A stretch of 64,000 nt of DNA from Octopus sinensis (lineage: Eukaryota). The position numbers and the translations under genes are program-made. The number at the start of each line of letters is the position of its first letter. Position 1 is the first letter of the stretch. The stretch is taken from the NCBI RefSeq assembly GCF_006345805.1, contig NC_043007.1, positions 47,988,001 to 48,052,000 on the forward strand, in the 5' to 3' direction. Below, in pieces: positions 3,896 to 62,156 of this stretch. The notes below the pieces were generated by a model. That model saw nothing but the letters and a program-made list of their open reading frames with translations, was not told the origin of the DNA and made no database searches.

Positions 3896-4114
3896 ATATA
3901 CACAAACTTAAGAGGAATGACCAATAAATTGGACACCTATTATGCTAAACATAGACGTGAAGTAGCCATTACCACGAAGAGTGCGTTTTCCAAAAGAATC
4001 TCAGCAAACCCCCAAAATGTTAAAATGAGCAAGAGAAATGAAAATATACGAAATAAAAAACGATTACCTATGTACGATGATTTCACCCCTTAATATTCAC
4101 TTATGTAAATACGT

Positions 4115-9180: not shown

Positions 9181-9208
9181 GCTGATACCCATAAAATATA
9201 GAAGATGT

Positions 9209-9235
<27 letters not shown>

Positions 9236-9239
<4 letters not shown>

Positions 9240-10040
9240 GGTTGTCACGTCATCTCGACGAACAACAATCGAGGGAACAAGCCGGCTTCTGGAAGAACTA
9301 CAGCACGATGGACCATATATTTACTCTAACCCAACTGCTTGAGCGAGCGAATGAGTTCAAGCTGCCTCTTTGCGTTGCGTTTGTAGACTATGAGAAGGCC
9401 TTCGACAGCGTCGAAACCAACGCAGTGCTGAACTTGCTGCAGAGGCAAGGAGTCGAGGCGCACTATGTGCAACTGCTCAGGAAGGCAAATTCCGAATGCA
9501 CCACCGACATAGCTCTGCTGTCATCATCCGTACGAGTGCTGGTCGAGAAGGGAGTGAAGCAAGGAGATACGATCTCTCCAAAACTTTTCACCGCATGTCT
9601 CGAACATATCATCAGAGGCATTCTACCTGCAATGTCATATGGTAGTGAAACATGGGCTACAACAAACAGAGAAGAGCAGAGACTGGTAACGGCTCAAAGA
9701 GCCATGGAAAGGTCAATGCTTGGAATCTCGTTGAGAGAGCACATCAGTAGCGAGGTCATCAGAGAGAAGTCCGGCGTGGGGGATGTCATCGCAGAATATG
9801 CACGCAGCAAGTTTAGATGGGCTGGACACGTCGCCCGGCTCACCGATAATCGGTCGACCCGTGCAGTTGTCGAGTGGTAACCGCGCGAGCGGAAACGACC
9901 ACTTGGAAGGCCTCCACGACAGTGGAGTTACGATTTCAGGAGGACGATTGGGATCAGGTGGATGAGAAAGGCGCGATCCAGAGAGAAGTGGACAGCGTGC
10001 TGTGACCAGCGGTGTCAAATAGACGCCCGACGGACTGGTC
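9236..10040 (+). mobile_element. RTE-clade LINE 3' fragment with an internal deletion spanning YADD
   Basis: EQAGF...STMDHIF...FVDYEKAFDSVE...GVKQGDTISPKLF joined directly to ILPAMSYGSETW...RWAGHVAR. Flanked by (TA)n. Confidence 0.9.
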
Positions 10041-18098: not shown

Positions 18099-18365
18099 TA
18101 TATATGTATATGGACGTATGTATGTATGTATATATGTATTTATGTGTCTTTGTGTTTGTGTTTTATCTTTGTCCCGCCACCATCACTTGACAACTGACAT
18201 TGGTGAGTTTATGTAATTTAGTGGCTCAGCAAAAGAAACCAATAGAATAAGTACTAAGCTTACAAAGAATAAATCCTGGGATTGATTTCTTTGACTAAAA
18301 AACCCTTGAATGTGGTGGTGCTCCATCATGGCTGATGTCAAATGACTGAAGCAATAAAAGAATAA
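17685..18365 (+). mobile_element. Family A SINE split by an RTE-tail fragment and microsatellites
   Basis: 5' half at 17685-17845, 3' half at about 18130-18365. Confidence 0.7.
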
Positions 18366-18374
18366 ATATATATA

Positions 18375-18380
18375 TATATA

Positions 18381-18419
<39 letters not shown>

Positions 18420-18440
18420 TATACATACATACATACATAC

Positions 18441-18471
<31 letters not shown>

Positions 18472-20322
18472 TAATCCAAACGGGAAACAAAAAAACAACA
18501 ACAATGGAACAATTACAGTATTATTATTAATAGGCGCTCAGGAAATGGAAGCAGGGAGGTATGACATTTCGAGCGGAGCTCTTCGTCGGAAACATAAAGA
18601 AGGAAGAGAGAGGAAAGAAAGATCCCAGAGCGGGCAACAGGGAAAGAGAAAAAAGACGACTGGTGTTTACGAGTTGCACATGGTGAAAGGCGGATGTTTA
18701 CGAAAACAGAGCAAAGTGGGTTTTTAAAGGCAAAAGAGTGGAGACAAGGTTGGTAACGCAACAGATGTGTGTGTATGTGTGAGTGTGTGCGTGTGCGTGT
18801 GTGTATGTGTGCGTGTGTGTATGTGTGTGTGTGAGGCGAGATGAAAAAACAAAAAGATATATATGTGTGTGTTAGTGTGTGCGTCTGTGTGTAGGCGTGT
18901 GAGGTAGGGCGAGACTAGTGGTCAGCTTAGCAGACAAGGTCAGTAGTAAGAAAAAGAAGGAAGGAGGAAGGGAGGGAGGGGAAGGGGTGGGGGCGTATGT
19001 AGCGTGCCAGCGTGTGTTGAGTAGTAGTGTGTGTGTGTGTCCAGTGTCGTGGTGGTATTAATGGCGAGTAGATTGAATGTGTGTAAGTGTAATGTATATA
19101 TTTAAGCAATGTGTGTATATGTGTGCGCGTGTGTGTAACGAATAAGGGGGGGGGGGTTAAGGAAAAAGGACGCGTAAGTATGTATGTGTGTGGATGTGTG
19201 AGTGTGTCTGTGTGTATGTCTGGGTGGCAGTGTGTCCGATGAATGTATGTGAGTATGTGTGTATGTATGTGTGTGCATAGATGTATGTCCGTGTGTGTGT
19301 GTGTGTGTGTATGTGTGTGAGTGTGTATGTATGTACGTGTGGGTGTGGGGAAGTGTGTGTATGTGCATGTGTGTGCGCGTACATACAGGTGTGTGAGTGT
19401 GTGTGTGTGTATGTATGTGTGAGTGTGTATGTATGTGTGTGTAGGATGCATGTATGTGTATGGGTGTATGTATGCGTGTGTGTATGTATGTATGTGTACG
19501 TGCGTGTGTGTGTGTGTGTATGCGTGTAGGTGTGCGCGTGTGCATGCATGCATGTGCGTATGTGTGTGGGTATATATGTATGTGCGTATATGTGTGTGTA
19601 TGTGCGTACATGTGTGTGTGTGTGTATGCATGTGTGTGTATGTAGGTGTGTAGGCGTGTGTGTATAGGTGTATGTATGTAAGTATGTATGGGTGTGTCCG
19701 TGTATGTGTGTGTATGTATGTGTGTGTATGTATGTGTGTGTATGTAGGTGTGTGGGCGTGTGTATATGTGTGTGTATGTAGGTGTGTGGGCGTGTGTATA
19801 TAGGTGTATGTGTGTATGTCTGGGTGTGTCCGTGCATGTTTGTGTGTGTGTGTGTATGCATGTGTATGTAGGTGTGTGTGTACGTGTGTAATGTATGTGT
19901 GTATGCGTGTGTATGCGTGCGTGTGTGTATGTAGGTGCGTGTGTATGTGTGTATATATATAGTGGAGGTTCAATGGCCCAGTGGTTAGGGCAACGGACTC
20001 GCGGTCATAGGATCGCGGTTTCGATTCCCAGACCAGGCGTTGTGTGTGTTTATTGAGCGAAAACACCTAAAGCTCCACGAGGCTCCGGCAGGGGATGGTG
20101 GTGATCCCTGTTGTACTCTTTCACCACAACTTTCTCTCACTCTTACTTCCTGTTTCTGTTGTACCTGTATTTCAAAGGGCCGGCCTTGTCACTCTCTGTG
20201 TCACGCTGAATATCCCCGAGAACTATGTTTAGGGTACACGTGTCTGTGGAGTGCTCAGTCACTTACACATTAATTTCACGAGCAGGCTATTCCATTGATT
20301 CGGATCAACCGGAACCCTCATT

Positions 20323-20374
<52 letters not shown>

Positions 20375-22496
20375 CTACATACATACATTACACTTGTATA
20401 CACACACACTTACATTCATACACACACACACCTACACAGCCATACCCTCACTCGGACACACACAAACACACACGGACACACACCCATACATACATCTACA
20501 CACACACGCCTACACACATACATACACACATACATAACACACACACATACACATATACACACACACACACATATACTTATACACATGCACACACACACAC
20601 ATACATACATACACCCATATACATACACACACACATACCCACATACTCCTATACGCAATACATACACACAGACATACACACATACACACTCACACAAACA
20701 TACACACACACATACTTACACACACACTCACCTGCACGCGCACACACATGCATGACAAACACCCATACACTCACACTCACATACACACACACCAAGATAA
20801 ACACGCACACGCACACACACACCTACACTCCCACACACATACACACGCACCTACATACACACACGCACGCATACACACGCATACACACATACATTACACA
20901 CGTACACACACACCTACATACACATGCATACACACACACACACACAAACATGCACGGACACACCCAGACATACACACATACACCTATATACACACGCCCA
21001 CACACCTACATACACACACATATACACACGCCCACACACCTACATACACACAACATACATACACACACATACACGGACACACCCATACATACTTACATAC
21101 ACACACCTACATACACACAATGCATACACACACACACATGTACGCACACACACACACACATATACGCACAACATATATACCCACACACATGCACACCACA
21201 CACACACATACGCACATGCATGCATGCATGCACACGCGCATACACACACACACACGCACGTACACATACATAAATACACACAGCATACATACACCCATAC
21301 ACATACATGCATCCTACACACACATACATACACACTCACACATACATACACACACACACACCACTCACACACCTGTATGTACGCGCACACACATGCACAT
21401 ACACACACTTCCCCACACCCACACGTACATACATACACACTCACACACATACACACACACACACACACACGGACATACATCTATGCACACACATACATAC
21501 ACACATACTCACATACATTCATCGGACACACTGCCACCCGGACATACACACAGACACACTCACACATCCACACACATACATACTTACGCACATACTCGCA
21601 GGCTCGCGCACGCACGCGCACGCACGCGCTTGCGCCGGGTCGCGTACGCATACGCTCCGCAGGCATCTCGCTCTTGGAACCGACAAGACCTCCCGCCCGT
21701 TCCTGGGACCGTCGCGTGTCGTTGGGTTTTCCCACGCCCGCCTCCGCGGGACCACTCTTCCATCTTCCCCTCAGCTGGAGTCCTTTTTCCTTAACCCTCC
21801 CCCCTTTTTCGTTACACACACGCGCACACATATACACACATTGCTTAAATATATACATTACTCTTACACACATTCAATCTACTCGCCATTTATACCACCA
21901 CGACACTGGACACACACACACACTACTACTCAACAAACGCTGGCACGCTACATACGCCCCCACCCCTTCCCCTCCCTCCCTTCCTCCTTCCTTCTTTTTC
22001 TTACTACTGACCTTGTCTGCTAAGCTGACCAGTAGTCTCGCCCTACCTCACACGCCTACACACAGACGCACACACTAACACACACATATATATTTTTTTG
22101 TTTTTTCATCTCGCCTCACACACACACATACACACACGCACACGCACACACTCACACATACACACACGCACACGCACACACTCACACATACACACACATC
22201 TGTTGCGTTACCAACCTTGTCTCCACTCTTTTGCCTTTAAAAACCCACTTTGCTCTGTTTTCGTAAACATCCGCCTTTCACCATGTGCAACTCGTAAACA
22301 CCAGTCGTCTTTTTTCTCTTTCCCTGTTGCCCGCTCTGGGATCTTTCTTTCCTCTCTCTTCCTTCTTTATGTTTCCGACGAAGAGCTCCGCTCGAAATGT
22401 CATACCTCCCTGCTTCCTTTTCCTGAGCGCCTATTAATAATAATACTGTAATTGTTCCATTGTTGTTGTTTTTTTGTTTCCCGTTTGGATTAAAAT

Positions 22497-22529
<33 letters not shown>

Positions 22530-22542
22530 GTATGTATATATA

Positions 22543-22575
<33 letters not shown>

Positions 22576-22576
22576 A

Positions 22577-22611
<35 letters not shown>

Positions 22612-25564: not shown

Positions 25565-25653
25565 GTAGTCTGGGCAAGCACTGCTACTGTTGGTTGTGGA
25601 TACACTGCTTGCACGAATATAGGAAAGCTGTATGTATGTAACTATGGTCCAGG
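25565..25653 (+). CDS. CAP gene 1 exon (VVWASTATVGCGYTACTNIGKLYVCNYGP-G)
   Basis: tttacag acceptor and gtaagc donor. 89 nt, phase 0 to 2. Completes GHYTQ-VVW and carries the YVCNYGP CAP signature. Follows a 19-kb intron. Confidence 0.95.
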
Positions 25654-28040: not shown

Positions 28041-28105
28041 AGGAAACAGTGCTTACTCTCTTAACAGACCTTATAAATCATGTGATGGCCCTACGCAACT
28101 AATCG
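28041..28105 (+). CDS. CAP gene 1 exon (G-GNSAYSLNRPYKSCDGPTQLI-D)
   Basis: gtttcag acceptor and gtgagg donor. 65 nt, phase 2 to 1. Completes NYGPGGN and contains the conserved PY. Confidence 0.88.
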
Positions 28106-29483
28106 GTGAGGAAATCTTTTTATTGAATACACTTCTAAACCTTCATAATGGAATGTATAAGCCGGATGTTGAGCTGTCATTTTGTTGTGTGAATTCTTTA
28201 ATAGGATCTGTTATCCTTTTGATACAAACCCCCTCTCTTGATACTGTCTTTTGTGTTAAAACTAAATACCAGCTTAATAATCACAAAGTTATTTTATCAA
28301 ATTCTTCATAATTGTAAATAAAGATTTCAAATTTTAGCACAAGGCCAGCAAGTTCAAGGGGATGGGGTAAGTCAATTACATCAACCCAAGTGCTCAACTG
28401 GTACTTATTTTATCAAGAGACTAACTTCATTAATAGGTCAAACTTGCCATATAGGGGACAAGTGTATTTATATACTGCTTGGGAATGTGTGCTGTAAGAC
28501 AAATAGCCAGTAGATATTAAGAGTTAATATTAACATAATGTAGGTTGTTGGTAGAAGTATATGTAATTAAGAAAGAGCAAAAAAATTGTCAGAAAAAATT
28601 AAGGTGTCAGTGGGTTTAGGATTCCAGTTGACTGATCACTAAGTCACTGGGATTATGATGAATATTAGAAAGAACAAATAGCAATAATAGTATCATTATA
28701 GTTTCATGAGAAAAGGTTTGCAAGAGAACGATGGCAGGTTCTCCTGCACTGTCTTTTATATTTTAGTGTAGCACATGAATGACTCGAGGAATGATGGAGA
28801 AGGTACTGCAGAAGATAATAATAATAGAAAAGGATTATACATGCACAGACATGTCTGCATGGTTATGAACTTTCCTTCCCAACTGCATGGCTTAGGGTTC
28901 AACCCCACTGCAGGGTACCTTGTGCTGAACAAAGCCTTGTGAGTGGATTTGGTAGATGGGAAGTGAAAAAAGCTTGTTGTGTGTGTGTTTCTGTGTGAGT
29001 TTGCATGTGTAAAGAATAGCATTCTGATGGTTGATTTTCTTGCAGTCCACCACAAAAGCATGGTCAAGACTCTTTGAAAATTCTTCACATGTAGCACACC
29101 ATTCAAAACAAATGGCTCATTCATGCAGTGTCATATATTTCTACCACTCTCCATAAAACATGTTTGAACTGTCTGAGATTTGTTCACTAGGCTTGGGAGG
29201 TTATTAATTCGCTTGGAAACAGGAAGGGAAAGTTAGTAACAGGAAGGGCATCCTGCCATGAAATACACTGTTCCAATGGTCAGACATGATCAGGCAAATC
29301 TGAACAGACGATGAGTCATCAATCCACCTTCTTACAACTTGACAAAAGCATTGTTTTTTTACAAATATTCCCATTTTTAGTTTTATATTTTTATCAGAAA
29401 TGCATTATAATTAAAATGTAATTTCTGACATAATTCAATAATGTAATATATTAAGCCATGAAAACTTTCTAATTTACTTTCAG

Positions 29484-29585
29484 ATTGTAAAGGAAAGGTT
29501 TGTCTGAATGAAGGTTCAAGGATTGATAATGGTTGTAATTGTAAATGTGGTAGTTCAAAATACTTTTCTCAACCAGACTGTTCAA
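29484..29585 (+). CDS. CAP gene 1 EGF-like exon (D-CKGKVCLNEGSRIDNGCNCKCGSSKYFSQPDCS)
   Basis: ctttcag acceptor and gtaaat donor. 102 nt, phase 1 to 1. Six Cys in a C-x4-C-LNxG...C-x-C-x-C...C pattern. Confidence 0.88.
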
Positions 29586-30169
29586 GTAAATATATTTATT
29601 TAATATTGATACTTTAACTATTTATATATAATAATAATAATAATAATTAAAGTACAAAAAGAAATCCCAAATTGTACCATCCTTTGTACAGGTGAGTTGG
29701 CAGTGTTGTATATTGACAACTGCTGTTGGATAAAGAACAGCTTATAATGTTGATGGGACCAAGCCTCCCAAGATATGATGCTGATTGAAACAAATTGTTA
29801 TATACTGTAGCTAATCTACCCAAACTACCATGGGTGGAGAAATATAAGATAAATTGTTGTTGTTGCTGACGTTGTTGTTGTTGTTGTTGTTGTTGTTGTT
29901 GACGTTGACGGTGACGATGACGATGATAATGATGATGACAATAATGATGTAGACGAAAATGATGGTGATGATGATGATGATGATGACGATGATGATGACA
30001 ACTATGACAATAATATCAAATAATAAGAAATTTGGACAGTAATTAGTTCTGAAATTATCATTGTGAGTTTTGTTATACATTCACTGTTTCTGTTTATTAT
30101 TATGTTCCTATATAATATGACATTGACGGTTTTAAACAAAACAGATTAGCTTTAGGTAAACCTTCTCCA

Positions 30170-30800: not shown

Positions 30801-30921
30801 CCTGTAATCTCTATAACTAAGTATTGAGTAATGCTACTTTTTGCATTGAAGTGAAATTTTGTTTTCCCTATAAAGCCAATTCCTCATTTTGTCTCCTGTA
30901 TTAATTTTTTGTTCTTTATAG

Positions 30922-31038
30922 TGAATTGTTCTCTAGGCAAAGACAAATATTACTGTGGTTCATACTACAAACCAGAATGGTGTTCTCAGTATTCCAATGT
31001 TCCAAACTTATGTCCTAAAATGTGTGGAATATGTCCAT
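30922..31038 (+). CDS. CAP gene 1 ShKT-like exon (M-NCSLGKDKYYCGSYYKPEWCSQYSNVPNLCPKMCGICP)
   Basis: ctttatag acceptor and gtaagt donor. 117 nt, phase 1 to 1. C-x8-C-x8-C-x9-C-x3-C-x2-C spacing ending CPKMCGIC. Confidence 0.88.
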
Positions 31039-31539
31039 GTAAGTAACTTGTATTTTTATGCTTTTACTTCTTCCTTCCTTCTCTAATAGCAGCTCACAAA
31101 ATACTCTAATCAAAGTTTATGTGACTTATATTTTATAAAGACAGATTAGATACTGAGCTTTCTGAAGTCAACAAGAAAAAGACAAACAAAATGCAAGCTG
31201 TAACAACACTATCTGCCATCTCTTCCTTGCTATCTCTTGTTCCCATCTATTTTGTGCACAATTTGTCTTTCACAAACATCAATGATGTCAATATTGAAGA
31301 ACATTTCAGAAGCTAAAACTGAACTGTTGTGATAGAAGTGTGTATATGGAAGTAAGCTGCAACAAGATATAGCTAGTCCAGTTACTTAGACACAGAGGTA
31401 TCCTATATATGGTAGCAATATAATGTGTGCTTTGTATAGGGCCAACAACTAGCAAGAGTTACAGGTGTGAAGATAAAGCCTATTATTTAAATTACAGTTA
31501 ACAGCTGTTTTATAATTTATTATAAAGTATTATAATGTA

Positions 31540-34369: not shown

Positions 34370-36610
34370 TTCTTAGGAAGTCTCAAAAAGGGAAATCCTA
34401 GGACTGGATCGAATTCCTATCTTCTGGTTAAATTGTCTGACAGAAGTACACCAAAATTTCGCTTCGTTTCTGACTGATATCATCCAGAACCCAGGCAAAT
34501 AACTGCCTGACTAACCGAAGGAACAACATACGTTCTACCAAAAAACTGAAGACAAAAAAATCCAAAGAACTACCGACCAATAACATGTCTCAACATCATC
34601 TACAAAATCCTCACATCCATATTAACTGACAGAAAATACGCTTCCCTTGAACAGAGGTCTATCCTTCCACAAGCTCAAAAGGCTGTAAAAGGAATTCTTA
34701 TGGGTGCAAAGATCAATTACTCATAAATAAAATGATTGTAAATAATTGCCGGAGCAAAACGAAGAACCTGAGTTTGGCATGGATAGACCACAGGAAAGTG
34801 TTTGATTGTGTCCCACTTAATTGGATACTGAAGGCCCTTGAAATATACAAAATCTCTCTTGTCATCTCTAAATTCTTACAAGGTAGCATGGCCAAGTGGA
34901 ACACACATATCCTTCTAAACCATAGTAATGGGATGAGCCAAACCAGCAACATCAGCATCAAACGAGGCATCTTTTAAGGTGACTCCCTCTCCCATTATTC
35001 TTTTGCATGGCGCCGATCCCACTCTCAAACGAACTAAATAGCACTAGATATGGGTTTAAAGATCACAATATGACAATAAACCATCTGTTTTATATGGACG
35101 ATCTGAAGCTGTTTGCTAGAAATGACAAAGAGTTATTGGGGTTGCTAACAACTTTTAAAGAATTCAATAATGACATCCGGATGGACTTTGGCCTTGATAA
35201 GTGTGCTAAAACAAGTTTTGTTAGAGGAAAGCTCAGGTAAATAGATTCCATTAAATTAGATACCGACGCTACCATCAAGGAGCTTGACCCACAAGAAAAT
35301 TACAAATATCTGGGGATAAACGAAGGAGATGGCATACAACATGCTACTATGAAGGAAAATATAAGAAAGGAGTACTACAGGAGAATAAGAGTCATTCTAA
35401 AAACTGAACTCAACTCTAAAAATCGCTTCGAAGCCATTATCTCCTTGGCACTTCCAGTAGTCCAATATAGTTTTAACATAATTAACTGGAATCTTACAGA
35501 GTTCCAACGCCTGGGCAGAAAGACAAGAAAACTACTAACATCTAAAAACATGCACCATCCAAAAGCAGGTGTTGATTGTCTGTACCTACCAAGAAGAAAA
35601 GGGGGAAGAGGAATGATGCAGGTAGAACTGTGATATAAGACCTCCACAATAGCAATGAACAGGTACTTATCTAGTACAGAGGACTGGATGCCGTGGCTTG
35701 TGTGCGAACATGAAAGCAGCAAAAAATCACATTCTATTGTCAAGGAAGCTTGCAAATTCGCAAGGGAACTTGGATTTAACCCTGAAATAGTTGAAGAACC
35801 TGAAACCATTTCCACAAAACAAGCAAAATGGACCAAGGAGACTGCAAGAAAGAACGGGCAGAATCAAATTGAGGAGCCTCTGCATGGACACTATATACTT
35901 CGAAGTCGAAATGCTGATGTAGACCAAGCAACAACCCATCAGTTGCTGAGAAGTTCAGGACTGAAAGCAGAGACTAAAGGTTTCATATTGGGGGAACAAG
36001 ATCAAAGCTTGCTAAAAAAAAACAAAAAAAACTATCAGGTTAACGGTCTTCAAAACCGTTCTGACCCTAAATGCAGCTTCTGCGTCACATTTGACGAAAC
36101 AATGGACCATCTCGTCTCAGAATATCCTATGGTGACACCAAACTAATACAAAAATCGCCATGATAGATTAGTACAGCATTTACATTGGGAAGTATGTAAA
36201 CACTACAAAATCAGCACCCCTGCTTACTGCTATGAACATCATCTCGAGCCAGTCGTTCAAGGTTAAAATATCACAGAACGATCCAGGCTAATCGACCAGA
36301 CATGATTATCAAAGACAGAGAAGAAAATACTTGTAGACTAAAAGATGTAAGCGTTCCCACTGATAAGAATATATCTGTGATGGAATTTGACAAACTGAGT
36401 AAATATAAGGACCTGGAAATTGAAATGCAAAAGATGTGGCATCTTAAAGCGAGAACTATTCCTGTTATTGTAGGCGCCCTAGGAATGATAAAAATAGAGA
36501 TGTCAGAAACATCTAGATAAGATCCCGGCAGAACCATGTCAACATAGAAATTCAAAAGATTGTACTGACAAGTACTGCCCACATCCTTAGAAAAACCTTA
36601 TCCATTTAAA
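34370..36610 (+). mobile_element. Degenerate R4/Dong-like LINE (RT + restriction-like endonuclease)
   Basis: AWIDHRKVFD, HLFYMDDLKLFA, FGLDKCAK, HHPKA..DCLYLPR, SGLKAET, KLSKYKDLEIE...TIPVIVGALG. Many stops and frameshifts. Confidence 0.9.
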
Positions 36611-36904: not shown

Positions 36905-37450
36905 TCATGTCCTGATGCAGTACCAGACAGTGGTTTCCGTGGCATCTGATCTTAACTAATTGGAAGTGTTATCATGTACATTGTTTTGTCTTGGTATAAA
37001 AGATGGGCTACAGCAAATCTTCTGCTCAATACCACAGATTTGCTTGTCAGTTGTTTGACCTTAACCAGTTGAACATGTTCCTTAGTGGCTGACAATATGT
37101 GCATCTCTGATCATGAGCAGAAGTAGTGGGGGTGCATCATAGCCATATGTTGAGAGGAATTCTTTGCGGTTTGGATGGAAATTTGGTTGTTTCGTTCAAA
37201 ATACTTAAACAACCCTTATTCAGGGACCTTTTGAGCGGGATGGGCCACCCGACCAGAAGAAAATTCTAACTGGGCCCCATCTGCACTGTTTATCTTGATA
37301 TGAGATCACCATGTCGCACACATAGGGCTGTGATGCATGTGCCTAGTGTACCCTTATCAGACGGGTAGTCATGATGGGTATACTGGGCTTCGTATGTTTT
37401 ATCCCAGTGTCACTTTTTTTGGCATGCACTGCTCTCTCACTTGATGATAA
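36905..37450. repeat. Unclassified about 530-bp dispersed repeat flanked by (AAT)n
   Basis: Aligns with 56135-56640 (gatgcagtaccag...gcactgctctctcact). Confidence 0.8.
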
Positions 37451-37464
37451 TAATAATAATAATG

Positions 37465-37680
37465 ATGATTTCAAGTTATTTGTCACGAGGGCAGCTTCGG
37501 GAAGGGGATTAGGTCGATTACATTGACTCCAGTGCCTAACTGGTACTTATTTAATCCACCACGAAAGGATGACAGGCAAAGCCGACCTCGGCGGAATTTG
37601 AACTGAGAACGTAGAGACAGACGAAATACCGCTATGCATTTCGTTCAGCGTGCTAACGATTCTGCCAGCTCGCCGCCTTA
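37465..37680 (-). mobile_element. tRNA-derived SINE, family B (aaggcggcgagctggcagaatcgttagc...)
   Basis: Further copies at about 28325-28420, 40315-40510, 40555-40720 and 62300-62460. Confidence 0.82.
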
Positions 37681-37869: not shown

Positions 37870-38212
37870 GAGAATACATGTGGGTTAGTAGAATCCAGTG
37901 ATTTCATTAAATCAGGCATCTCCGGAGGAGTGAACAGAGATGTTCGCTCGAGAGCTTGAAATTCATCGTTTGCAGCTTTCAAAGCGAGGAATTGTGGCCG
38001 GTGCTTCAGCTCGAGCAGACCTACTGGTGTAGCCACAGTCGCTGAGGGCTTTGTTATCATCGAAGGTACTTTCATCTCTGGAGAGTCTCTGATTCTCTGG
38101 TGGTGCTTTAAGAACTCCTTCAGCAATCTTCTTTACTTCATAAACGGTAGTTTTCTTCAACGTCTATAAAGATGGTACATCTCTTCCTTCTGATCATTAA
38201 AAACACATCCAT
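37870..38212 (-). pseudogene. ELOB: Processed Elongin-B pseudogene, two frameshifts
   Basis: Intronless MDVFLMIRRKRCTIFIDVEE/TTVYEVKKIAEGVLKAPPENQRL...DDNKALSDCGYTSRSARAEAPATI/LALKAANDEFQAL...PPEMPDLMK, matching the well-known Elongin B sequence (MDVFLMIRR...APATVGLAF...PPELPDVMK). Confidence 0.9.
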
Positions 38213-38240
38213 TGTATAAGTTGCGTATATTATATATACA

Positions 38241-38382
38241 ATGGATATGTTCTAATGATTAGAAGGAAGAAGTGTACCATCTTTATAGACGTTAAAGAAA
38301 AACACTACCATTTATGGAGTAAAGAAGATTGTTGAAGGAATTCTTAAAGTACCACAAGAGAATCAGAGACTCTTCAGAGATG
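38241..38382 (+). pseudogene. ELOB: Second, 5'-only Elongin-B retrocopy, head-to-head with the first
   Basis: atggatatgttctaatgattagaaggaagaagtgtacc...cagagactcttcagagatg is a diverged inverted copy of about 38070-38212. Confidence 0.85.
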
Positions 38383-40265: not shown

Positions 40266-40311
<46 letters not shown>

Positions 40312-40856
40312 CCTTTCTACTATAGACACAAGGCCTGAAATTTTGAGGAAGGGGGCGTCGATTACATCGACACCAGTACGCAACTGGTACTTAATTTATC
40401 GACCCCGAAATGATAAAAGGTAAAGCCGACCTCGGCTGGATTTCAACTCAGAAAGTAGCGACGGGCGAAATACCGCTAAATATTTCGTCCAGTGTGCTAA
40501 TGGATGCCAAAAGGCATTTTGTCAACGTTTAATTAAAAAAACAAATAATCTTTTCTGTTATAGGCACATGACATGATTTTAGGGGTGAAGGATAAGTCGG
40601 TTATCTCGACTCCAGTGCACAACTGGCACTAATTTTATCGATACCAAAAGGATGAAAGTCAGGCGAAGGTAAAAGGGAACGAAACGCCGCTTAGCATTTT
40701 TGTTAACGATTCTCCCATGTCACCGTCTAAAAGAGAGATAGATAGTAATGAGAATGGCCGGAGATGTAAAATACGTGCCTCAAGAATTGTTATTTGTAAA
40801 GCGTAGTAGAAGAGATATATGCTTATATAAACAACATATAAGAAATATGCGAGGAA

Positions 40857-40997
40857 ATGGGAAAGTTGGCAAAGGATTCCCTTCTTCAATGTTTATTCTT
40901 ATTTTTTATTTGTTTTTCTTTGTTTCTTTGTAAACTTCAGCAGTTTCACCGACTGTAAAAGGAGATACTACATTATCAATTGAGACAACTACAACAG
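40857..40997 (+). pseudogene. Frameshifted duplicate of the gene 2 first exon; 40941-40997 could still act as a 57-nt phase-1/1 cassette exon (xVSPTVKGDTTLSIETTTT)
   Basis: About 40680-41170 aligns with 41820-42470 plus 45131-45235. ATG 40857 reads MGKLAKDSLLQCLFLFF... but is out of frame with the Thr-rich part. cag/cag acceptor at 40940/40943 and gtaagt donor at 40998. Confidence 0.55.
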
Positions 40998-41593
40998 GTA
41001 AGTGAAACCGTTAGAAGTGCTTATCCAAGGACAATAATGAATATGTGAGTGTATTGTGTGTGTGCATATATATATCCTGTACCTCAAGTCATTTGGTGCC
41101 CTCTTTGATATCCTTCAGGCAACTACAGAGTGGGTAAAGGTCTCCAGCCCTCTAAGGCAATTCACCGAGAAGGCCACTCATTGTAAAACCTACGGTTTGC
41201 TACCCACCGCAGCCATCTTAGTCCGCTGAGCCCTTGTGGTCGGACCTCGAAAGGATGGAATTGTATTGCGCGCACTGACTCTTCCTTTAAAACTACTAAA
41301 TGCAGGCAAGGAGAAAAGCCTGCATCATCAAGGATCGGTTCAAATAGCCACGCGAAGGCGTGCCCCTTTCATTCATGATATTCGGGCACAAAGAAACTGC
41401 TGTGAATAAGTATGTATGTATGTATGTATGTATGTATGCATCTATCTATCTAACTATTTTTCTATCTATCTATCTATCTATCTGTCTGTCTGTCTGTCTG
41501 TCTATTTATCGGTCTATCTATCAATTTCTCTCTCTCTCTTAATATATATATATATATATGTATGTATACATATATATGTTATATATATATGTA

Positions 41594-41650
<57 letters not shown>

Positions 41651-41676
41651 TATATATATATATGTATATATATATG

Positions 41677-41712
<36 letters not shown>

Positions 41713-41718
41713 TATATG

Positions 41719-41770
<52 letters not shown>

Positions 41771-41782
41771 TATTATATATAT

Positions 41783-41813
<31 letters not shown>

Positions 41814-42002
41814 AAGATGGACAAAAGGCCGCTAAGCATTTTGCCTGGCGTGTAAACAATTCTCCCAGCTCGCCATACGGTAAGATAACTAATAAGAAAA
41901 ATGGTCGGGTTTGTAAAATATGTGCCTCAAGAGCTGATATTTGTATAACGTTGTAGAAGAGACATAGCTTATATTAGCAACATATAAGGAATATGCGAGG
42001 AA

Positions 42003-42424
42003 ATGGAAAAGTTGTCAAAGAATTCCCTCCTGCAACGTTTATTTTTATTTCTATTTATTTTTGTTTTTGTTTGTGCTGTGATGAGTTACGACGGCCCCTT
42101 GCGAGAGATAGACTGGTCCGAGAAAAGTATAAATAATAACAATCCGAGTGAGCTAATGGTTCAGAGTTCGGAGTCCAGTGAAGTTCGTGTTAGTTCGCAG
42201 TGAAGTCGGAAGGTGTCGGTTGGTCAGTTGACTGTTAGTTCGTGAAGATGTTTGTTAGTTCGTTACATTGTTGTTACTTGTCTGGTTATCTTATTTATTG
42301 TACGTAACAAATTACGTTACTAAAGTTTGTTTATTTATAAACTGTCTAGAAACTTCAACAGCTGCACCGACTGAACAAGCAGATACTACATTGCTAAGTG
42401 AGACAACTCTTCCAATTACAACAG
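42003..42424 (+). CDS. CAP gene 2 putative first exon (signal peptide + Thr-rich segment), interrupted by a solo LTR at 42079-42360
   Basis: Removing the LTR plus one GCTG copy gives an uninterrupted MEKLSKNSLLQRLFLFLFIFVFVCA-APTEQADTTLLSETTLPITT. It ends at a G|gtaagt donor (42425) in the phase needed by the next exon. Confidence 0.6.
42079..42360 (+). mobile_element. Solo LTR, 282 bp, inside the gene 2 first exon
   Basis: TGATGAGTT...AACTTCAACA termini with GCTG duplication (42075-78 and 42361-64). TATAAA at 42128. Confidence 0.7.
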
Positions 42425-42477
42425 GTAAGTAAAACGTTAGAAGCGCTTATCTACGGACAATAATATATATATATATT

Positions 42478-48138: not shown

Positions 48139-48214
48139 AACTGCCCTAACAAGTACCAGAAAATAGCAAATCACTCTGGTTGCCTTTCAAAATCTCCTCT
48201 TGTAAAAAAATCTG
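48139..48214 (+). CDS. CAP gene 2 exon (NCPNKYQKIANHSGCLSKSPLVKKS-G)
   Basis: tttccaacag acceptor and gtaagt donor. 76 nt, phase 0 to 1. C..Y.....HS.C resembles the pre-CAP N-terminal motif of invertebrate CAP proteins. Confidence 0.82.
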
Positions 48215-48382: not shown

Positions 48383-48455
<73 letters not shown>

Positions 48456-48461
48456 TAATAA

Positions 48462-50573
48462 CTTATCAATAGCCTGGATAGACTATAAAAAGGCTTTTGA
48501 TAGCCTACCACATAGCTGGATTAGGGAATGCCTTGAAATGTATAAGATAGCACCAACTCTGCGAAACTTCTTGACTGTAAGTATGAGATCATGGAGAACC
48601 ACACTAACTCTGAACAGTGACAGTGAATCCCTAAATGCTGGTGATGTAAAAATTTCGTGTGGCATTTTCCAGGGTGACTCACTGTCACCACTCCTCTTTT
48701 GTTTATCCTTAATACCTCTCTCAAAGCTGCTCAATGACGCGCAGTACGGGTATAAAATGTTTGATAAAAATATAAATCATCTCGTTTACATGGATGATTT
48801 AAAGCTTTTTGCAAAAAATGATCAACAACTCAAGGGCTTACTAGCGATAGTCAAACAATTCAGTGACGACATCAGAATGCAATTCGGCCTCGATAAATGT
48901 GCAAAGGCTACCTTTATCAAAGGAAAAATGACAGAAACATCTAACGTTAACCTTGACCAACAGAATGTCATAAAAGAACTAGACCCAGCGGAGAGCTACA
49001 AGTACCTAGGGGTAATTGAAGGGAACGGAATAAGGCATTCAGAGATGAAGGAAAGGATCAGGAGAGAATGCTATCGAAGAGTGAGAGCAATACTCAAGAC
49101 AGAGCTGAATGCAAGAAACAGGATCGAAGCAATCAATGCATTAGCTGTACCAGTCGTGACTTACAGTTTCAATATTGTTAACTGGTCAATTACTGAAATA
49201 TGTCAGCTCGACAGAAAAATAAGGAAACTGTTGACAATGCATAGAATGCACCACCCTAAGGCAGATACAGAACGACTCTATCTGCCAAGAAAAGAGGGAG
49301 GCCGTGGTCTTTTGCAACTGGCAATAACAATGAAGATTGCTACAATTGGCCTAGACACCTACCTGAAAAACTCTGAGGACTGGATGTTAAAACTTGTCTC
49401 AAAACATGAAAACAAGAAAGCATCATACTCAGTCACAAAACAGGCAAAGGAATATCTAAGTGAATTCCGAATACAACCAATTTCGGAATTAGAGATAGAC
49501 ATACAAGAAACAAGCACAGAAAAAGCTAGGCGCATGAAAACCCGTGCCAAAACTGCGGCCTTAGATATTCTGAATAATAAATGGCAAGAAAAACCTCTCT
49601 ATGGCAAATACCCAAAGAGAGCGAATAATGCAGATATCGACAAAGCCCTGACCCATCAATGGCTAATGGCCTCTGGCTTAAAATCTGAAACAGAGGGGTT
49701 TATCATAGCAGCTCAAGATCAATGCCTACCAACAAGAAACTACCAGGCCAACATATTAAAGATCAGAAGCAGTCCAACGTGTCGTGTATGCAAGCAACAA
49801 AATGAAACCATTGACCATGTGGTCTCCAAGTGCAGTCTTCTAGCGCCTACAGAGTATCTCAACAGGCACGATAGAGCTGCACAATATATTCACTGGGTAA
49901 TCTGTAAAAACCTGGATTTGCCCCATGAAAAAAACTGGTGGGAACACAAACCACCCCCAGTGCTTGAAAATGACCACATCTCACTCCTCTGGAACTTCAC
50001 CATTCAAACTGACAGGAAGATAGATGCAAATAGGCCAGACATCATATTGAAAGACTTCAAACAAAGAACATGCCTCCTCATTGATATGACTGTCCCAATC
50101 GATATAAACGTATCTGTCAGGACCTACCAAAAACTGAGCAAATATAAAGATCTTGAAATAGAAATCAGCAAAATGTGGAAGCTGAAGACTAAAACAATAC
50201 CTGTTGTCATAGGTGCCCTGGGAATGATAGCAAAAGGGGCTGATAGCTACCTAACTCAGATACCAGGAAACCCAAAAATGGCAGAAGTTCAAAAGATAGT
50301 GCTCATGGGAACTGCTCATATCCTACGCAAAATACTCTCTATGTAACCTCAAGGTTTAAAACAACCATAATTTTCGGTTTAAAAAAAAAAAAAAAAAGAA
50401 AGAAAAAAAAAAACTTTTTTTTTTAGACATTCATTAGTACAACATCCCCACCCCCCAAATATATGGCACACTAGGCATAACAACAACATGAACTTCCAAC
50501 CCTGTTGTCTCTTGAGGTCTCTGGGTGAGACTTGGAGCCAACTTGTACAAATATAAAGCAAAAGTCAAACATA

Positions 50574-50699: not shown

Positions 50700-53600
50700 A
50701 CGATTATAATTGTAACGGCAATGATGGCCGTCTCCCCACGAGCCAATCAAAGCTAATAAATGTTAACATTATCGTAGCACCAAAATGTTTTTGGAAACTA
50801 AAAGGAAAACTAAATCAGTATACCAAATCGCTTGTCCTATGGTTAATCTGGAAGCGCGTCCCCCAGGGAAGAGCCAGCCTGGGATCGAAAAGTCATCAAC
50901 TGGCACAAACTCTTCTCCGAATACGGACATGGATGGTCACTTGAACGGGAAATCCCCCAACTCGAGCCCTCCAAGTTCACCACCACAACCACCACAGAAA
51001 GAAAAATGTAAGCGGAACAAATGGACCCGAGAAGAGTATAAAGAAGTAATATACGCTTATTACTATGCATTAGGTAGGCCATCTCAAGAGAGACACACCG
51101 CAAACTCTTACAGTATATGGAGAACACGGAATCAAGACAGTAGGCCCTATTTGGACGAGAACAAATTAGCAAATGTGAGGAGGGATATCCTTAGAAATAA
51201 CAGACTCACAGACAGTGAAATAAGCGCGATCAAGCACGCAACGGAAAATGACATAAATATAAGACACAAAGGAAATGAAGAATCAGATGAACAGTATAGC
51301 CCGCCACGAGGCTTAATTGAAAGACTGCCATCTGACCAAAGTACGCAAAGGCCTGAAGATACAAGAAATTCTATTGTACCTGTTAAAGATAGCCAGGAAA
51401 ACGAAAAAACAGCAGTAACTGAAGATCTCGCATTTGCTGAAGAACACAGAGAGTCTATGGCAGAAATGAGGCAGAAAATCCTGAATACGCTTGAAGTTGT
51501 AAGACATACAAGTATGAATGATAGAGAACCACTTCATAAACTCTCAAATACAAACCAAAATAAAAACAAATCCAAATTGGCAACTATGTAACAAATGAAA
51601 TAATACGAGAATTAAACCTGATTTTACTGAGTTAAATGAAATTATTTACGCTTCTGCTAGGGCAATTGAAACCAGCTGTATGCCCCCGAAAAAACAAAGA
51701 AAACAAAACCTGGGAAGAAATCAAACCTGGAGAAGTAAAATTGAAAAAGAGATTGAATTTATGAGAGGGGAAATATCAATATTAAATGAACTAATATGTG
51801 GAAATGATGTAAGATCCAGAACGGGAAGAAAGATGAAGAGAAAATTTGGATCCTCACCAAGAGAAGAACTGATATCAATAAAAGAAACGCAGAAACAAAA
51901 AGTCCAAGCAGAAGCCCAAAGAATACGAAGATTTGAGAAGAGAAACAAGTTTTACAAGCAAAATAAGCTGTTCACATCCAATGCCAAAAAATTCTACAGA
52001 GAAATAGGGAAGGAGAAAGTAACCGTTAAACACCCCCCTCCCATGGAAGAAGTTCAAAACTTTTGGAAAAGGATTTGGAGTGACAAGAAGACGTACAACA
52101 TAAATGCAGACTGGATTATACAAACTGAAGGATCCTACCAAAATTTACAACAACAAGCATGGGAAGACATCACAATAGCAGACCTAAGAAAGGCAATCAC
52201 GAAGGCCTATAATTGGAAATCCCCCGGTAAAGATAAGGTGCCGAATTTCTGGCTCGCATCGCTTCCATGCGCACACGGTAAGCTAGTTCAGCTGCTCAAT
52301 GGAATTATGAGAGACCCAAAGAAAACACCTGAATGGTTAGCAAGTGGCATTACTTACCTACTCCCAAAGAATAACGAAACCAACCTTCCAAAAAACTATC
52401 GGCCTATAACCTGTCTATCCACCACGTATAAAATCCTAACATCTATCCTGACGGAGAAAACATATGCATTCATGGAGAAGAACGATATTTCCCCATTGAA
52501 CAAAAAGGGTGCCGCCGAGGCATTTACGGATGCAAAGATCAACTGCTAATTAATCGTATGATCCTTGAGAACTGTCACAACAAGCGCAGAAATCTCAGCA
52601 CCGCATGGATTGACTATAAAAAGGCCTTCGACAGTATACCGCATCCATGGATCTTGAGATCGCTGGACATCTTCAAAATTTCCCCTGTGATTTCAAACTT
52701 CCTAAAGCACAATATGTCGTTGTGGAATACGAATCTCCAATTATACCACTCTAATGGAGTACTTGCCTCAGAAAATATAAACATCAACTGTGGAATTTTT
52801 CAAGGTGACTCACTTTCACCTTTAATATTCTGCATAGCCCTAATACCCCTTACAAGTGAATTAAACAGAACAGGGTATGGGTATAAAATTGCCAAGAAAA
52901 AAATAAGCCATCTATTTTATATGGATGACTTAAAACTTTATGGTAAAGACAATAATGAACTTGAAGGCCTATTGCGCACCGTGAAAGCATTCAGCGATGA
53001 CATCGGGATGGAGTTTGGACTTGAGAAGTGTGCCAAGGCCACTTTCCAGAAAGGGAAAGTGAAGACCACAAATTCAGTCGTGTTAGATGTTGACACAGCC
53101 ATAAGAGAGCTTGAGCAAGTACAAGCATACAAATATTTAGGGATAAATGAAGGCTCTGGTATTCAGCATGCAAGCATGAAAGAGAAAATCAGGAAGGAAT
53201 GTTATAGGAGAGTTCGTGCAGTCCTGAAATCTGAACTAAATGCACGTAACAAGGAGTTAGCTATAAATTCCTTAGCAGTTCCAGTTGTTATTTATAGCTA
53301 CAATGTGTTGAACTGGAATATGAGTGAAGTAAAGAATATAGATAGGAAAATACGCAAGCTGCTGAGTTGTAATAGGATGCACCACCCAAAGGCAGACGTA
53401 GATCGCCTTTACCTTCCCAGAGCCCAAGGAGGTCGAGGCCTGATCCAATTTGAACTAGCTTACAAAACAACCACAATTGGACTGGCCAAATATCTCGAAA
53501 TATCGAATGACTGGATGCTAAAGCTCGTGGAAAATCCCGAGAGACGAAAGAAGCTTCATTCTATAATAAAGGAAAGCAAAAAATTTGCTACTGATCTCGT

Positions 53601-54620
53601 GCAGGATACCCAAACTGAACAACCCGAGGGAAGTACGGCAACTATTGTTGCAAAGAAGGTGAAAATGATGGCAATGAAAAAAGCGCACGAGCAAATGGCT
53701 GATAGGTGGGAGGAGAAACCTCTGCACGGCAAATATGTGACCCGCAGCAAACAAACTGATGTTGACCAGAAGCAAACCCATCAGTGGCTACGGAGCTCAG
53801 GGCTAAAAGCAGAGAGCGAAAGTTTCATCCTGGCTGCTCAAGATCAAAGCCTATTAACCCGGAACTACCAGGCCAATGTGATGAAAAATGGAGCAGACCC
53901 AAAATGCCGATTCTGCAACGACATGATTGAAGCAGTGGACCACCTAATCTCTGGATGTAAAGTCTTAGCACCAGTGGAGTATAAATTAAGACATGACAGA
54001 GTTGGCCAATATCTCCACTGGCTAATAAGTCGGCATTACAATATCAAAACTGCCGACAAGTGGTATAATCACCACCCTGAGGCTGTAACTGAAGGAGAAA
54101 ATGTAACCATTCTGTGAGACTACAGACCGAACCATCAAGGCCAATAAACCAGATATTGTTGTGAAAGACCAAAACAATAAAGTTTGCTTATTGATCGACA
54201 TGAGCATCCCCTGTGATCATAATATCTCAGCGAAAGAGTTTGACAAGCTCAGAAAATATAAAGACCTACTCATTGAAATTGAGAAAATGTGGCATCTCAA
54301 GGCGGTTACAATACCAGTGATCGTAGGAGCACTAGGAATGATCAAGAAAGGAACCGAAAATTATATGAGAATGATCCCTGGCTTACCATCCCTGCAAGAA
54401 GTGCAAAAGATTGTCTTAACTGGTACATCACACGTATTGAGAAGAGCATTGTCGATGTGAGAACTGTTGCTGCTCATGTATTTTAATTTAACTTTAAAAA
54501 AAAAAAAAATGAACGAACTACTGAGTTTGGTTTAATGGCCTACCAATGTATACTATGAGTTTCTTTGCCCTAGGAGTCGGGAAGACACTCGGCAAGAAAT
54601 GGAAGCAAATTTGAAAGAAG
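50700..54620 (+). mobile_element. Near full-length R4/Dong LINE broken into four ORFs
   Basis: ORFs 50785-51591 (KWTREEYKEV, LANVRRDI), 51680-52549 (WKSPGKD, NYRPITCL), 52558-54117 (YMDD, CCHC, RHD) and 54161-54460 (RLE tail). (AAT)n flanks. Confidence 0.97.
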
Positions 54621-58087: not shown

Positions 58088-58179
58088 GTATGACAGACAA
58101 AGACAGAAACCTTATTGTAGATTTACACAATAAACATCGCAAAGACGTTGATCCACCAGCCTGTGACATGATGAAAATG
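58088..58179 (+). CDS. CAP gene 2 exon (G-MTDKDRNLIVDLHNKHRKDVDPPACDMMKM)
   Basis: tgtttag acceptor and gtaagt donor. 92 nt, phase 1 to 0. HN..R and P.A..M..M CAP motifs. Confidence 0.93.
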
Positions 58180-59119: not shown

Positions 59120-59784
59120 ATATATAATTAGAAATACTGCATTTCTAAATCTCTCAGAGAACCATACACAGTAGCAGCACGATAAAGTAATGGTTTGTTG
59201 CCAACTTAATGTGACAGTCCCAGGAAAGGGAAGAATGCTACTGCTATTTAGCCGCAAGAAACACCCTTTCTTGTAGCTACGTGACACAAGCGTTCTGTGT
59301 CCTTGTTTTCCAACAGGGGAGATAAGCACCTCCACCTAACAAAGCCAGCATCAGAGACTAGTTTCAGAGTAGATGCCCTTCATCAGTCTGGAGTAGTTTG
59401 GCCTTGCTAGCTGTCGGTGCTAAATCGCTGTAGAAAACTTATAGAATTTCAAGTGAAATAAATTCGCTGATCTACAAAATTAGAAATGCATTTCTAAATC
59501 TCTCAGAGAGAGTTATGCACTAGCAGCACAATAAAGTGATGAGAGATGCGTTCTGTGTCCTTAAGTTTTCTAACAGGGGAGATAAGCACCTCCCGTCGCT
59601 TTATCGTGCTGCTACTGCATAACTCTCTCTGAGAGATTTAGAAATGCAATATTTCATATTTTGTAGATAGGTGAATTTATTTCACTTGAAATTCTATATG
59701 TTTTCAACAGCGATTTAGCACCGACAGCCAGCAAGGCCAAACTACTCCAGACTGATGGAGTGCCTTGAATAAATAATAATAATA

Positions 59785-62065: not shown

Positions 62066-62156
62066 TACTGGGATAATGACTTGGAATATGTTGCTCAGAA
62101 ATGGGCAGAAAATTGCAAGTTTAATCATGAGAATGCATATCGACGAATAATACCTG
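62066..62156 (+). CDS. CAP gene 2 exon (YWDNDLEYVAQKWAENCKFNHENAYRRIIP-G)
   Basis: ttttcag acceptor and gtaaga donor. Same length (91 nt) and phases as gene 1 exon 2322-2412. Confidence 0.93.

What the first reader, a model, noticed from the sequence alone, without database searches (positions are those of the whole stretch)
42003..42424. A solo LTR inside the signal-peptide exon of CAP gene 2 creates its own splice acceptor and may be intronised in frame
Seen: a 282-bp TG...CA element with a GCTG duplication sits after codon 25. The reconstructed empty site reads MEKLSKNSLLQRLFLFLFIFVFVCA-APTEQADTT..., signal-peptide-like and in frame with all downstream exons, and it has no AG at that position. 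With the insertion, the frame stops at 42203. However, the last LTR base (A42360) plus the first duplicated base (G42361) form ...caacAG, a new acceptor. The LTR also carries a phase-1 donor GA|GTGAGC at 42148. Splicing 42148-42361 (214 nt) would restore the frame and add about 23 LTR-derived residues (VMSYDGPLREIDWSEKSINNNNP) right after the signal peptide. The LTR TATAAA (42128) could alternatively drive a leaderless transcript. Inference: either a pseudogenised allele or a case of intron gain with exonisation caught in progress.
Basis: partly seen in the sequence, partly recalled or inferred. Interest (0 to 1): 0.72.

Follow-up and report, generated by a model that had tools for sequence, protein, structure and literature searches.

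The report
Insertion in a decayed duplicate exon
The proposed "solo LTR becoming an intron" is more likely 275 extra bases inside the worse-preserved of two duplicated, already interrupted first-exon copies of a secreted CAP-protein gene, which is ordinary gene decay rather than the birth of an intron.

Summary
The interpretation has two problems.

First, a second copy of the whole unit lies about 1.1 kb upstream (40679-41044, about 77% identical). It has no insert, yet it reads ...TTTGT|AAACTTCAGCAG|TTTCACCG. So the 12-mer that holds the "new" AG is shared with an insert-free copy. The extra DNA defined by that copy is 42075-42349 (275 bp), which lacks TG...CA ends and has no target-site duplication at those ends.

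It is 76 nt, runs from phase 0 to phase 1, and has the same length and phases as its counterpart in a clam.

The frame that does fit this exon is the ATG 42003 frame read through the 12-mer. It is interrupted in both copies, at different places.

LTR identity remains unproven. The TG/CA plus 4-bp repeat pattern occurs by chance at 2.4% of comparable sites, and no second copy was found.

Best reading: an indel in a decayed duplicate 5' exon, not an intron in the making.

The parts
40679..41044 (+). Copy A of the duplicated 5' unit (SINE-like tail, about 130 nt, ATG, T-rich ORF, 12-mer, 54-nt segment, strong donor, start of intron). It has no insert.
   Evidence: blastn and self-blast: 40679-40923 matches 41821-42074 at 77.1%, and 40932-41044 matches 42350-42470 at 78.7%. 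Sequence read.
40857..40997 (+). Copy A from ATG to the donor CAG|GTAAGT. It is 141 nt and reaches the donor in phase 0. There is an in-frame TAA at 40956-58.
42003..42074 (+). Copy B: ATG in GAAATGG context plus a T-rich, signal-peptide-like ORF of 24 codons, up to the start of the extra DNA.
42075..42349 (+). The extra 275 bp of copy B relative to copy A (GCTGTGATG...AACTGTCTAG). No target-site duplication, TG...CA ends, terminal inverted repeat or poly(A) at these ends. It contains three copies of TGTTAGTTCG.
   Evidence: No tRNA or Rfam match. No other copy in the window.
42079..42360 (+).
   Evidence: Present as stated. Pattern expected by chance at 2.4% of comparable sites. Terminal inverted repeat p about 0.07.
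42350..42361 (+). AAACTTCAACAG, which contains the claimed "new" acceptor AG. Copy A has AAACTTCAGCAG at 40932-40943.
42362..42424 (+). 63-nt segment ending in the strong donor CAG|GTAAGT (GT at 42425). In the phase-0 frame it carries TAA at 42395-97.
42148..42153 (+).
   Evidence: PWM score 2.68, 97th percentile of all GT in the window. Accepted donors of the two CAP genes score 1.56-6.61.
48139..48214 (+). Conserved N-terminal module exon of CAP gene 2 (NCPNKYQKIANHSGCLSKSPLVKKS+G). 76 nt, acceptor ttccaacag| in phase 0, donor CTG|GTAAGT in phase 1.
   Evidence: tblastn of homologues, sequence, alignment A2. Same 76 nt and same phases in Ruditapes. 82 nt with the same phases in Mercenaria. 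Phase-0 acceptor in Logan contig L009.
58088..58179 (+). CAP exon (G)MTDKDRNLIVDLHNKHRKDVDPPACDMMKM, phase 1 to phase 0.
62066..62156 (+). CAP exon YWDNDLEYVAQKWAENCKFNHENAYRRIIP(G), phase 0 to phase 1.

Best explanation
Region 42003-42424 is the downstream member (B) of a tandemly duplicated 5' unit of CAP gene 2. The unit consists of a SINE-like tail, about 130 nt, an ATG, a T-rich signal-peptide-like ORF, the 12-mer AAACTTCARCAG, a 54-63-nt segment and a very strong donor. The gene's next exons are 48139-48214, 58088-58179 and 62066-62156.

Relative to the upstream member (A, 40679-41044), B carries 275 extra bp (42075-42349) of unproven origin. This is an insertion in B or, less simply, a deletion in A.

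The AG at 42360-61 and the bases before it are unit sequence older than the A/B split. They are not a junction product.

Only one frame can join the conserved phase-0 exon at 48139: the ATG frame read straight through the 12-mer (141 nt in A, 147 nt in B without the extra DNA). That frame is interrupted in both copies. A has a stop at 40956-58. B has the 275 bp plus a stop at 42395-97.

B is therefore a disabled duplicate exon, or simply intron-1 sequence if A or another exon is used. The extra DNA is a lesion in it, not an intron being born.

Shown: the duplication, the indel boundaries, the missed exon and its conserved phase, and the stops.

Inferred: that the unit is or was the gene's first exon, the polarity of the indel, and the absence of rescue by splicing.
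For: - An insert-free copy with the 12-mer and its AG exists, and BLAST breakpoints fall at 42074|42075 and 42349|42350.
- Homologues place a C-P-x-K-[FY]...H-[ST]-A-C module between the signal peptide and the G-[VM]-[ST]-x-x-D...HN exon. That module is encoded at 48139-48214.
- This exon is 76 nt, phase 0 to 1, exactly as in Ruditapes. The phases are the same in Mercenaria and in retained-intron contig L009.
- ATG-to-donor lengths of 141 and 147 nt are both multiples of 3.
- The 21 A/B differences in that continuous frame fall 12/2/7 on codon positions 1/2/3. The chance of 2 or fewer at position 2 is 0.013.
- No other ATG-initiated hydrophobic exon with a usable donor lies in 29.6-48.1 kb, and no intermediate exon ending in phase 0 lies in 42.4-48.1 kb.
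- The acceptor at 42361|42362 has the poorest pyrimidine tract (0.47) of all acceptors scored; the six gene acceptors score 0.58-0.74.
- The ten long ORFs scanned against Pfam gave only LINE-type RT and a mariner-type transposase.
- LTR elements are a small minority of octopus TE insertions: 153 of 10,988 recent ones in O. vulgaris (PMC13282606).
Against: - TG...CA plus a perfect 4-bp flanking repeat (p = 0.024) and a weak terminal inverted repeat (p about 0.07) do look like a solo LTR, and I have no positive identification of the 275 bp as anything else.
- At the copy-defined ends there is no target-site duplication, which is unusual for a transposon insertion.
- The frame I favour has one stop in each copy, which is about what neutral drift would give. 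Evidence that it was ever coding is therefore indirect: phase, length mod 3 and codon-position pattern.
- Hydrophobic ATG ORFs with a strong donor nearby are not rare in this T-rich DNA, so the unit may not be an exon at all.
- No transcript data were available.
Confidence: 0.55

Rival explanations
1. A solo LTR (42079-42360, target-site duplication GCTG) entered the single ancestral first exon before the unit was duplicated. Copy A later lost the left GCTG and all but the last 11 nt of the LTR. The AG is then truly LTR end plus duplicated G, and splicing from 42148 or 42073 to 42362 could restore a secreted product.
For: - TG...CA plus a 4-bp repeat occurs at only 2.4% of comparable sites. 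Weak terminal inverted repeat. The size and the TATAAA are typical of an LTR.
- Removing 286 nt joins the ATG frame to a frame that is open in both copies.
- The donor at 42148 scores within the range of accepted donors.
- An 18-mer near the element's 3' end (42326-43) matches copy A's junction region at 16 of 18 positions (p about 0.03-0.07). Together with the AAACT repeat, this could have mediated deletions in A.
- In the two bivalve genes exon 1 ends in phase 1, as this model's exon 1 would.
Against: - It needs a deletion in A that coincides almost exactly with the element (275 of 286 bp).
- The restored frame is out of phase with the conserved exon at 48139, and no phase 1-to-0 linker exon was found.
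- The acceptor's pyrimidine tract is weak.
- No second copy of the element was found, no LTR-type gene was found in the ten long ORFs scanned, and LTR elements are rare in octopus.
Confidence: 0.12
2. The duplicated unit is not an exon of CAP gene 2 at all. The T-rich ORF, the ATG and the strong donor are chance features of duplicated non-coding DNA. The true signal-peptide exon lies elsewhere, and the 275-bp indel has no bearing on the gene.
For: - T-rich DNA gives hydrophobic ORFs in every frame. A second ATG at 41993/40847 also gives a signal-peptide-like ORF in another frame.
- About six non-microsatellite loci with a hydrophobic ATG ORF plus a strong donor occur on the + strand in 64 kb.
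- Identity between A and B is flat (77-79%) across "promoter", ORF and intron.
- One stop per copy is the neutral expectation.
Against: - It is the only such candidate between gene 1's end (about 31 kb) and 48139.
- ATG-to-donor lengths are multiples of 3 in both copies and fit the required phase 0.
- Codon position 2 is depleted of A/B differences.
- The donor is the best-scoring class in the window and is identical in both copies.
Confidence: 0.2
3. The T-rich stretch is only a polypyrimidine tract. Segments 42362-42424 and 40944-40997 are real internal or alternative cassette exons in the reader's frame (phase 1 to 1). They are used in an isoform that skips the 48139 exon, and the 275 bp is then an intronic insertion between tract and AG.
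For: The frame is open in both copies, the 9-nt indel is in frame, and the donor is perfect. Copy A has a textbook tract plus CAG. A phase-1 donor fits the phase-1 acceptor at 58088.
Against: No upstream signal-peptide exon with a phase-1 donor was found. The isoform would drop an intact module that is conserved from bivalves onward. The codon-position pattern is the reverse of a coding one.
Confidence: 0.05

Closest known systems
Solo LTR left by LTR-LTR recombination of a Ty3/Gypsy- or BEL-type retrotransposon
   Same: Size (282 bp), TG...CA ends, 4-bp flanking direct repeat, an internal TATAAA.
   Different: The only available insert-free sequence does not show the element plus one repeat copy missing; it keeps the element's last 11 nt. 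No other copy or LTR-type coding sequence was seen. The pattern alone arises by chance at about 2% of sites.
Intronisation or exonisation of transposon sequence (for example Alu exonisation, or intron gain from inserted elements)
   Same: Inserted DNA inside an ORF carries a usable-looking GT, and an AG lies downstream. Removing 214 nt keeps a frame open.
   Different: The AG is not supplied by the insert. The frame kept open is not the one needed by the next conserved exon. There is no transcript evidence.
Birth-and-death decay in tandem families of secreted or venom-gland proteins (CAP/CRISP superfamily)
   Same: Two tandem CAP genes, a duplicated 5' unit, independent interruptions in the two copies, and downstream exons still intact.
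   Different: Whether gene 2 is really dead or uses another first exon is not known.
Target-primed (LINE/SINE-type) insertion into a T-rich site
   Same: T-rich target. A 13-nt T-rich stretch recurs at 42326-38. LINE and SINE elements dominate this genome and this window.
   Different: The two T-rich copies match at only 9 of 13 positions. There is no poly(A) or microsatellite tail, and no similarity to any LINE or SINE in the window.

Membership tests
Solo LTR | 5'-TG...CA-3' termini | tested here: met
   TG at 42079-80 and CA at 42359-60.
Solo LTR | 4-6-bp target-site duplication directly flanking the termini | tested here: met
   GCTG on both sides. However, TG/CA plus a repeat of at least 4 bp is found at 2.4% of comparable intervals.
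Solo LTR | Short terminal inverted repeats | tested here: inconclusive
   TGATGA-GTTAC against TGTTGAAGTTTC; score reached by 7% of random TG/CA pairs.
Solo LTR | A related empty site lacks exactly the element plus one copy of the duplication | tested here: not met
   Copy A lacks 42075-42349 and retains AAACTTCAGCAG.
Solo LTR | Other copies, or a full-length element with the same LTR | tested here: inconclusive
   None in the 64-kb window. No LTR-type domains in the ten long ORFs scanned against Pfam. Protein-library and metagenome scans were empty. The host genome itself could not be searched.
Intron gain by intronised insertion | Both splice sites are supplied or created by the insertion | tested here: not met
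   The donor GTGAGC lies inside the insert. The acceptor AG and the 10 bases before it are shared with the insert-free copy.
Intron gain by intronised insertion | Splicing restores the frame of the downstream coding exons | tested here: not met
   The restored frame is phase 1 at 42424. The next conserved exon (48139) starts in phase 0, giving a stop after 3 codons.
Intron gain by intronised insertion | Spliced transcripts exist | not testable with these tools
   No RNA data for this organism. The exact-protein look-up of the 66-aa ORF found nothing.
CAP/CRISP superfamily gene | CAP domain (PF00188) | tested here: met
   Gene 2 composite E = 3e-8 and gene 1 composite E = 8e-14. All homologues carry PF00188.
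CAP/CRISP superfamily gene | Exon structure shared with molluscan relatives | tested here: met
   The module exon and the two following exons have the same boundaries and phases as in Ruditapes and Mercenaria.
CAP/CRISP superfamily gene | Intact signal-peptide-coding first exon | tested here: not met
   No uninterrupted ATG exon ending in phase 0 was found between 31 and 48 kb. Both candidate copies are interrupted. The scan was crude.
LINE/SINE (target-primed) insertion | 7-20-bp target duplication and an A-rich or microsatellite tail | tested here: inconclusive
   13-nt T-rich repeat matching at 9 of 13 positions. No tail. The 18-mer similarity has p about 0.03-0.07.

The most novel reading that the evidence does not exclude
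A solo LTR older than the exon duplication really did split the signal-peptide exon. Its last base plus the duplicated G serves as an acceptor, and a GT inside it serves as a donor. This would make a new 214-nt intron and a secreted CAP isoform with LTR-derived residues that bypasses the conserved N-terminal module exon.
Probability: 0.06. Interest if true: 0.6.

Novelty: already known. Interest (0 to 1): 0.15.

Why it matters
The evidence points instead to routine decay of a redundant exon copy in a tandem gene cluster.

The case is a useful caution in three ways:
- T-rich DNA reads as a "signal peptide" in any frame.
- TG...CA plus a 4-bp repeat is not rare.
- A gene model built without homologues missed a 76-nt exon that decides the reading frame.

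Tried and rejected
- A second copy of the 282-bp piece in the window: none (blastn with word size 7).
- tRNA or Rfam origin of the insert: none; the only hits were microsatellite artefacts.
- Exact look-up of the 66-aa ORF in public assemblies: not on record.
- HMMER search of the insert's 41-aa ORF against 1.84 billion representatives: one chance hit to a repeat protein containing NTNNPSE.
- Exact 24-mer scan of JGI metagenome contigs: 0 matches.
- Transcript contigs of the nearest relatives (L002-L009): their 5' ends are not similar to the unit.
- Alternative donors: TTT|GTAAAC (copy A), TTT|GTGCTG and GCT|GTGATG (copy B) fall at the 43rd, 26th and 66th percentiles. I rejected them, although GTGATG at 42078 would give a neat 25-aa signal peptide in phase 0.
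- Other signal-peptide exons, or a phase 1-to-0 linker exon, upstream of 48139: none.
- Helitron, terminal-inverted-repeat or target-duplication signatures at the copy-defined ends: none seen by inspection.
- A long duplicated T-rich target: similarity of copy A's T-rich part to the insert is not significant (P = 0.53).
- Gene 1 against gene 2 in their one shared exon: about 78% nucleotide identity with roughly twice as many silent as replacement changes per site (my hand count). This is too short to say whether gene 2 is still under selection.

Full report
**What is in the sequence.** The region reads as the first-stage reader described:
- ATG at 42003 in a GAAATGG context.
- A T-rich ORF of 24-25 codons.
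- GCTG at 42075-78, TG at 42079, CA at 42359-60, and GCTG again at 42361-64.
- TATAAA at 42128.
- The ATG frame stops at TGA 42201-03.
- GA|GTGAGC at 42147|48.
- A strong donor CAG|GTAAGT after 42424.

Removing 286 nt, or 42148-42361, links the ATG frame to the frame that is open across 42362-42424.

**A sister copy changes the picture.** Searching the joined flanks against the window found a second copy of the whole unit upstream. 40679-40923 matches 41821-42074 at 77%, and 40932-41044 matches 42350-42470 at 79%.

This copy (A) has no insert. It reads ...CTTTGT|AAACTTCAGCAG|TTTCACCGACTG....

The extra DNA defined by copy A is 42075-42349 (275 bp). At those ends there is no TG...CA, no target duplication, no inverted repeat and no tail.

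**Is it an LTR?** Several searches gave no support:
- No other copy in the window.
- No tRNA or Rfam signal.
- Nothing relevant from a protein-library search with its ORF or from a metagenome scan.
- The ten long ORFs I scanned against Pfam encode LINE-type reverse transcriptases and a mariner-type transposase. None has an integrase, gag or protease domain.
- In Octopus vulgaris, LTR elements make up 153 of 10,988 recent insertions (PMC13282606).

On the other side, TG...CA with a flanking repeat of at least 4 bp, within 12 nt of the indel ends, occurs at only 2.4% of comparable positions. The termini also form a weak inverted repeat (p about 0.07). So the LTR signature cannot be dismissed.

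If it is real, the element must predate the A/B duplication, and copy A must have lost 275 of the 286 bp. An 18-mer inside the insert (42326-43) matches copy A's junction at 16 of 18 positions (p about 0.03-0.07). This could be read as the substrate for such a deletion, or as a decayed 13-nt target duplication of a LINE/SINE-type insertion.

**The gene model.** A homology search returned CAP proteins. The best hits were unnamed RNA-seq contigs, followed by bivalve proteins. All carry a module C-P-x-K-[FY]...H-[ST]-A-C...S-G between the signal peptide and the G-[VM]-[ST]-x-x-D...HN segment.

The exon is 76 nt, with acceptor ttccaacag| in phase 0 and donor CTG|GTAAGT in phase 1. Comparisons:
- In Ruditapes the orthologous exon is also exactly 76 nt with the same phases.
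- In Mercenaria it is 82 nt with the same phases.
- A retained-intron contig of a close relative shows ttttttag| in phase 0 before D-S-T-C-P.

The exon before 48139 must therefore end in phase 0. It is in frame only if this intact, conserved exon is skipped.

**Which frame fits.** From ATG 42003 straight through the 12-mer, that is without 42075-42349, the distance to the donor is 147 nt. In copy A it is 141 nt. Both are multiples of three and so fit phase 0.

The 21 A/B differences in this continuous frame fall 12/2/7 on codon positions 1/2/3. The chance of 2 or fewer at position 2 is 0.013.

This frame is interrupted in both copies at different places. A has a stop at 40956-58. B has the 275 bp plus a stop at 42395-97. 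One stop per copy is about the neutral expectation, so the evidence that the frame was once coding is indirect.

**Splice sites.**
- On a simple position-weight scale, accepted donors of the two CAP genes score 1.56-6.61.
- The unit's donor scores 8.61.
- GTGCTG at 42073, GTGATG at 42078 and copy A's GTAAAC are poor.
- The acceptor at 42361|62 has the weakest pyrimidine tract of all acceptors scored: 0.47, against 0.58-0.74 for the six gene acceptors.
- No other hydrophobic ATG exon with a usable donor, and no linker exon ending in phase 0, was found between 29.6 and 48.1 kb.
- Hydrophobic ATG ORFs near strong donors are not rare in this DNA, so the unit might not be an exon at all.

**Conclusion.** The most economical reading is that 42003-42424 is the more damaged of two copies of a duplicated 5' unit of CAP gene 2. 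The extra 275 bp is an indel of unproven, possibly transposon, origin. The AG predates it. No in-frame intronisation links it to the conserved downstream exons.

I give this reading about 0.55. The alternatives:
- The unit is not an exon: about 0.2.
- The amended LTR model: about 0.12.

Whether gene 2 still has a working first exon is unknown. Its three downstream exons in the window are intact.

**A note on method.** This was before I saw that relatives are annotated as venom proteins. After that I built no insert-free or stop-free sequence of the gene, and I name no changes that would reopen it.

The identification of the upstream repeat as an octopus SINE rests on my memory and on within-window copies. 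It does not come from a library match.

Noticed in passing
window 48139-48214: A 76-nt conserved exon of CAP gene 2 (NCPNKYQKIANHSGCLSKSPLVKKS+G).
   Followed up: yes
window 40679-41044: An insert-free upstream duplicate of the ATG / T-rich ORF / strong-donor unit. It is better preserved than the copy in the finding, with one in-frame stop at 40956-58.
   Followed up: yes
window 18362-19171 and 21780-22602: A 96%-identical inverted pair flanking DNA whose GC skew flips from +0.55 to -0.57. This is a large palindromic block rich in TG/CA-type repeats.
   Followed up: no
window 4115-4426; also 3502-3900, 38073-38382, 59375-59763: Self-inverted (palindromic) blocks of 300-400 bp. The first is 98.7% self-complementary.
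   Followed up: no
window 12462-13352 (-): A mariner/Mos1-type transposase ORF of 297 codons (Transposase_1, HTH_48).
   Followed up: partly
window 48454-50343, 52432-54114, 9146-9877, 34651-34974 (+); 11344-12027 (-): LINE-type reverse-transcriptase ORFs (RVT_1, zf-RVT). Two of them sit in the 10-kb intron between the 48139 and 58088 exons. The first is an open frame of 630 codons.
   Followed up: partly
window 37444-37674, 40289-40500, about 40590-40727, 41811-41874: Copies of one SINE-like repeat. Both copies of the 5' unit begin inside its tail. In copy B the rest of the SINE is replaced by a (TA)n tract at 41540-41810.
   Followed up: partly
window 2322-2412, 6375-6511, 25565-25653, about 28042-28083, 29482-29590, 30921-31040: Exons of the upstream CAP gene 1. 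Its 5' exons lie outside the window. They would be the natural comparators for the disputed site.
   Followed up: partly
window 41993-41995 and 40847-40849: A second ATG lies 10 nt upstream, in another frame. It also gives a signal-peptide-like ORF that runs into the open frame of the 54/63-nt segment, apart from one shared TAA at the TTG-TAA-ACT site. This shows how readily this T-rich DNA mimics signal peptides.
   Followed up: partly
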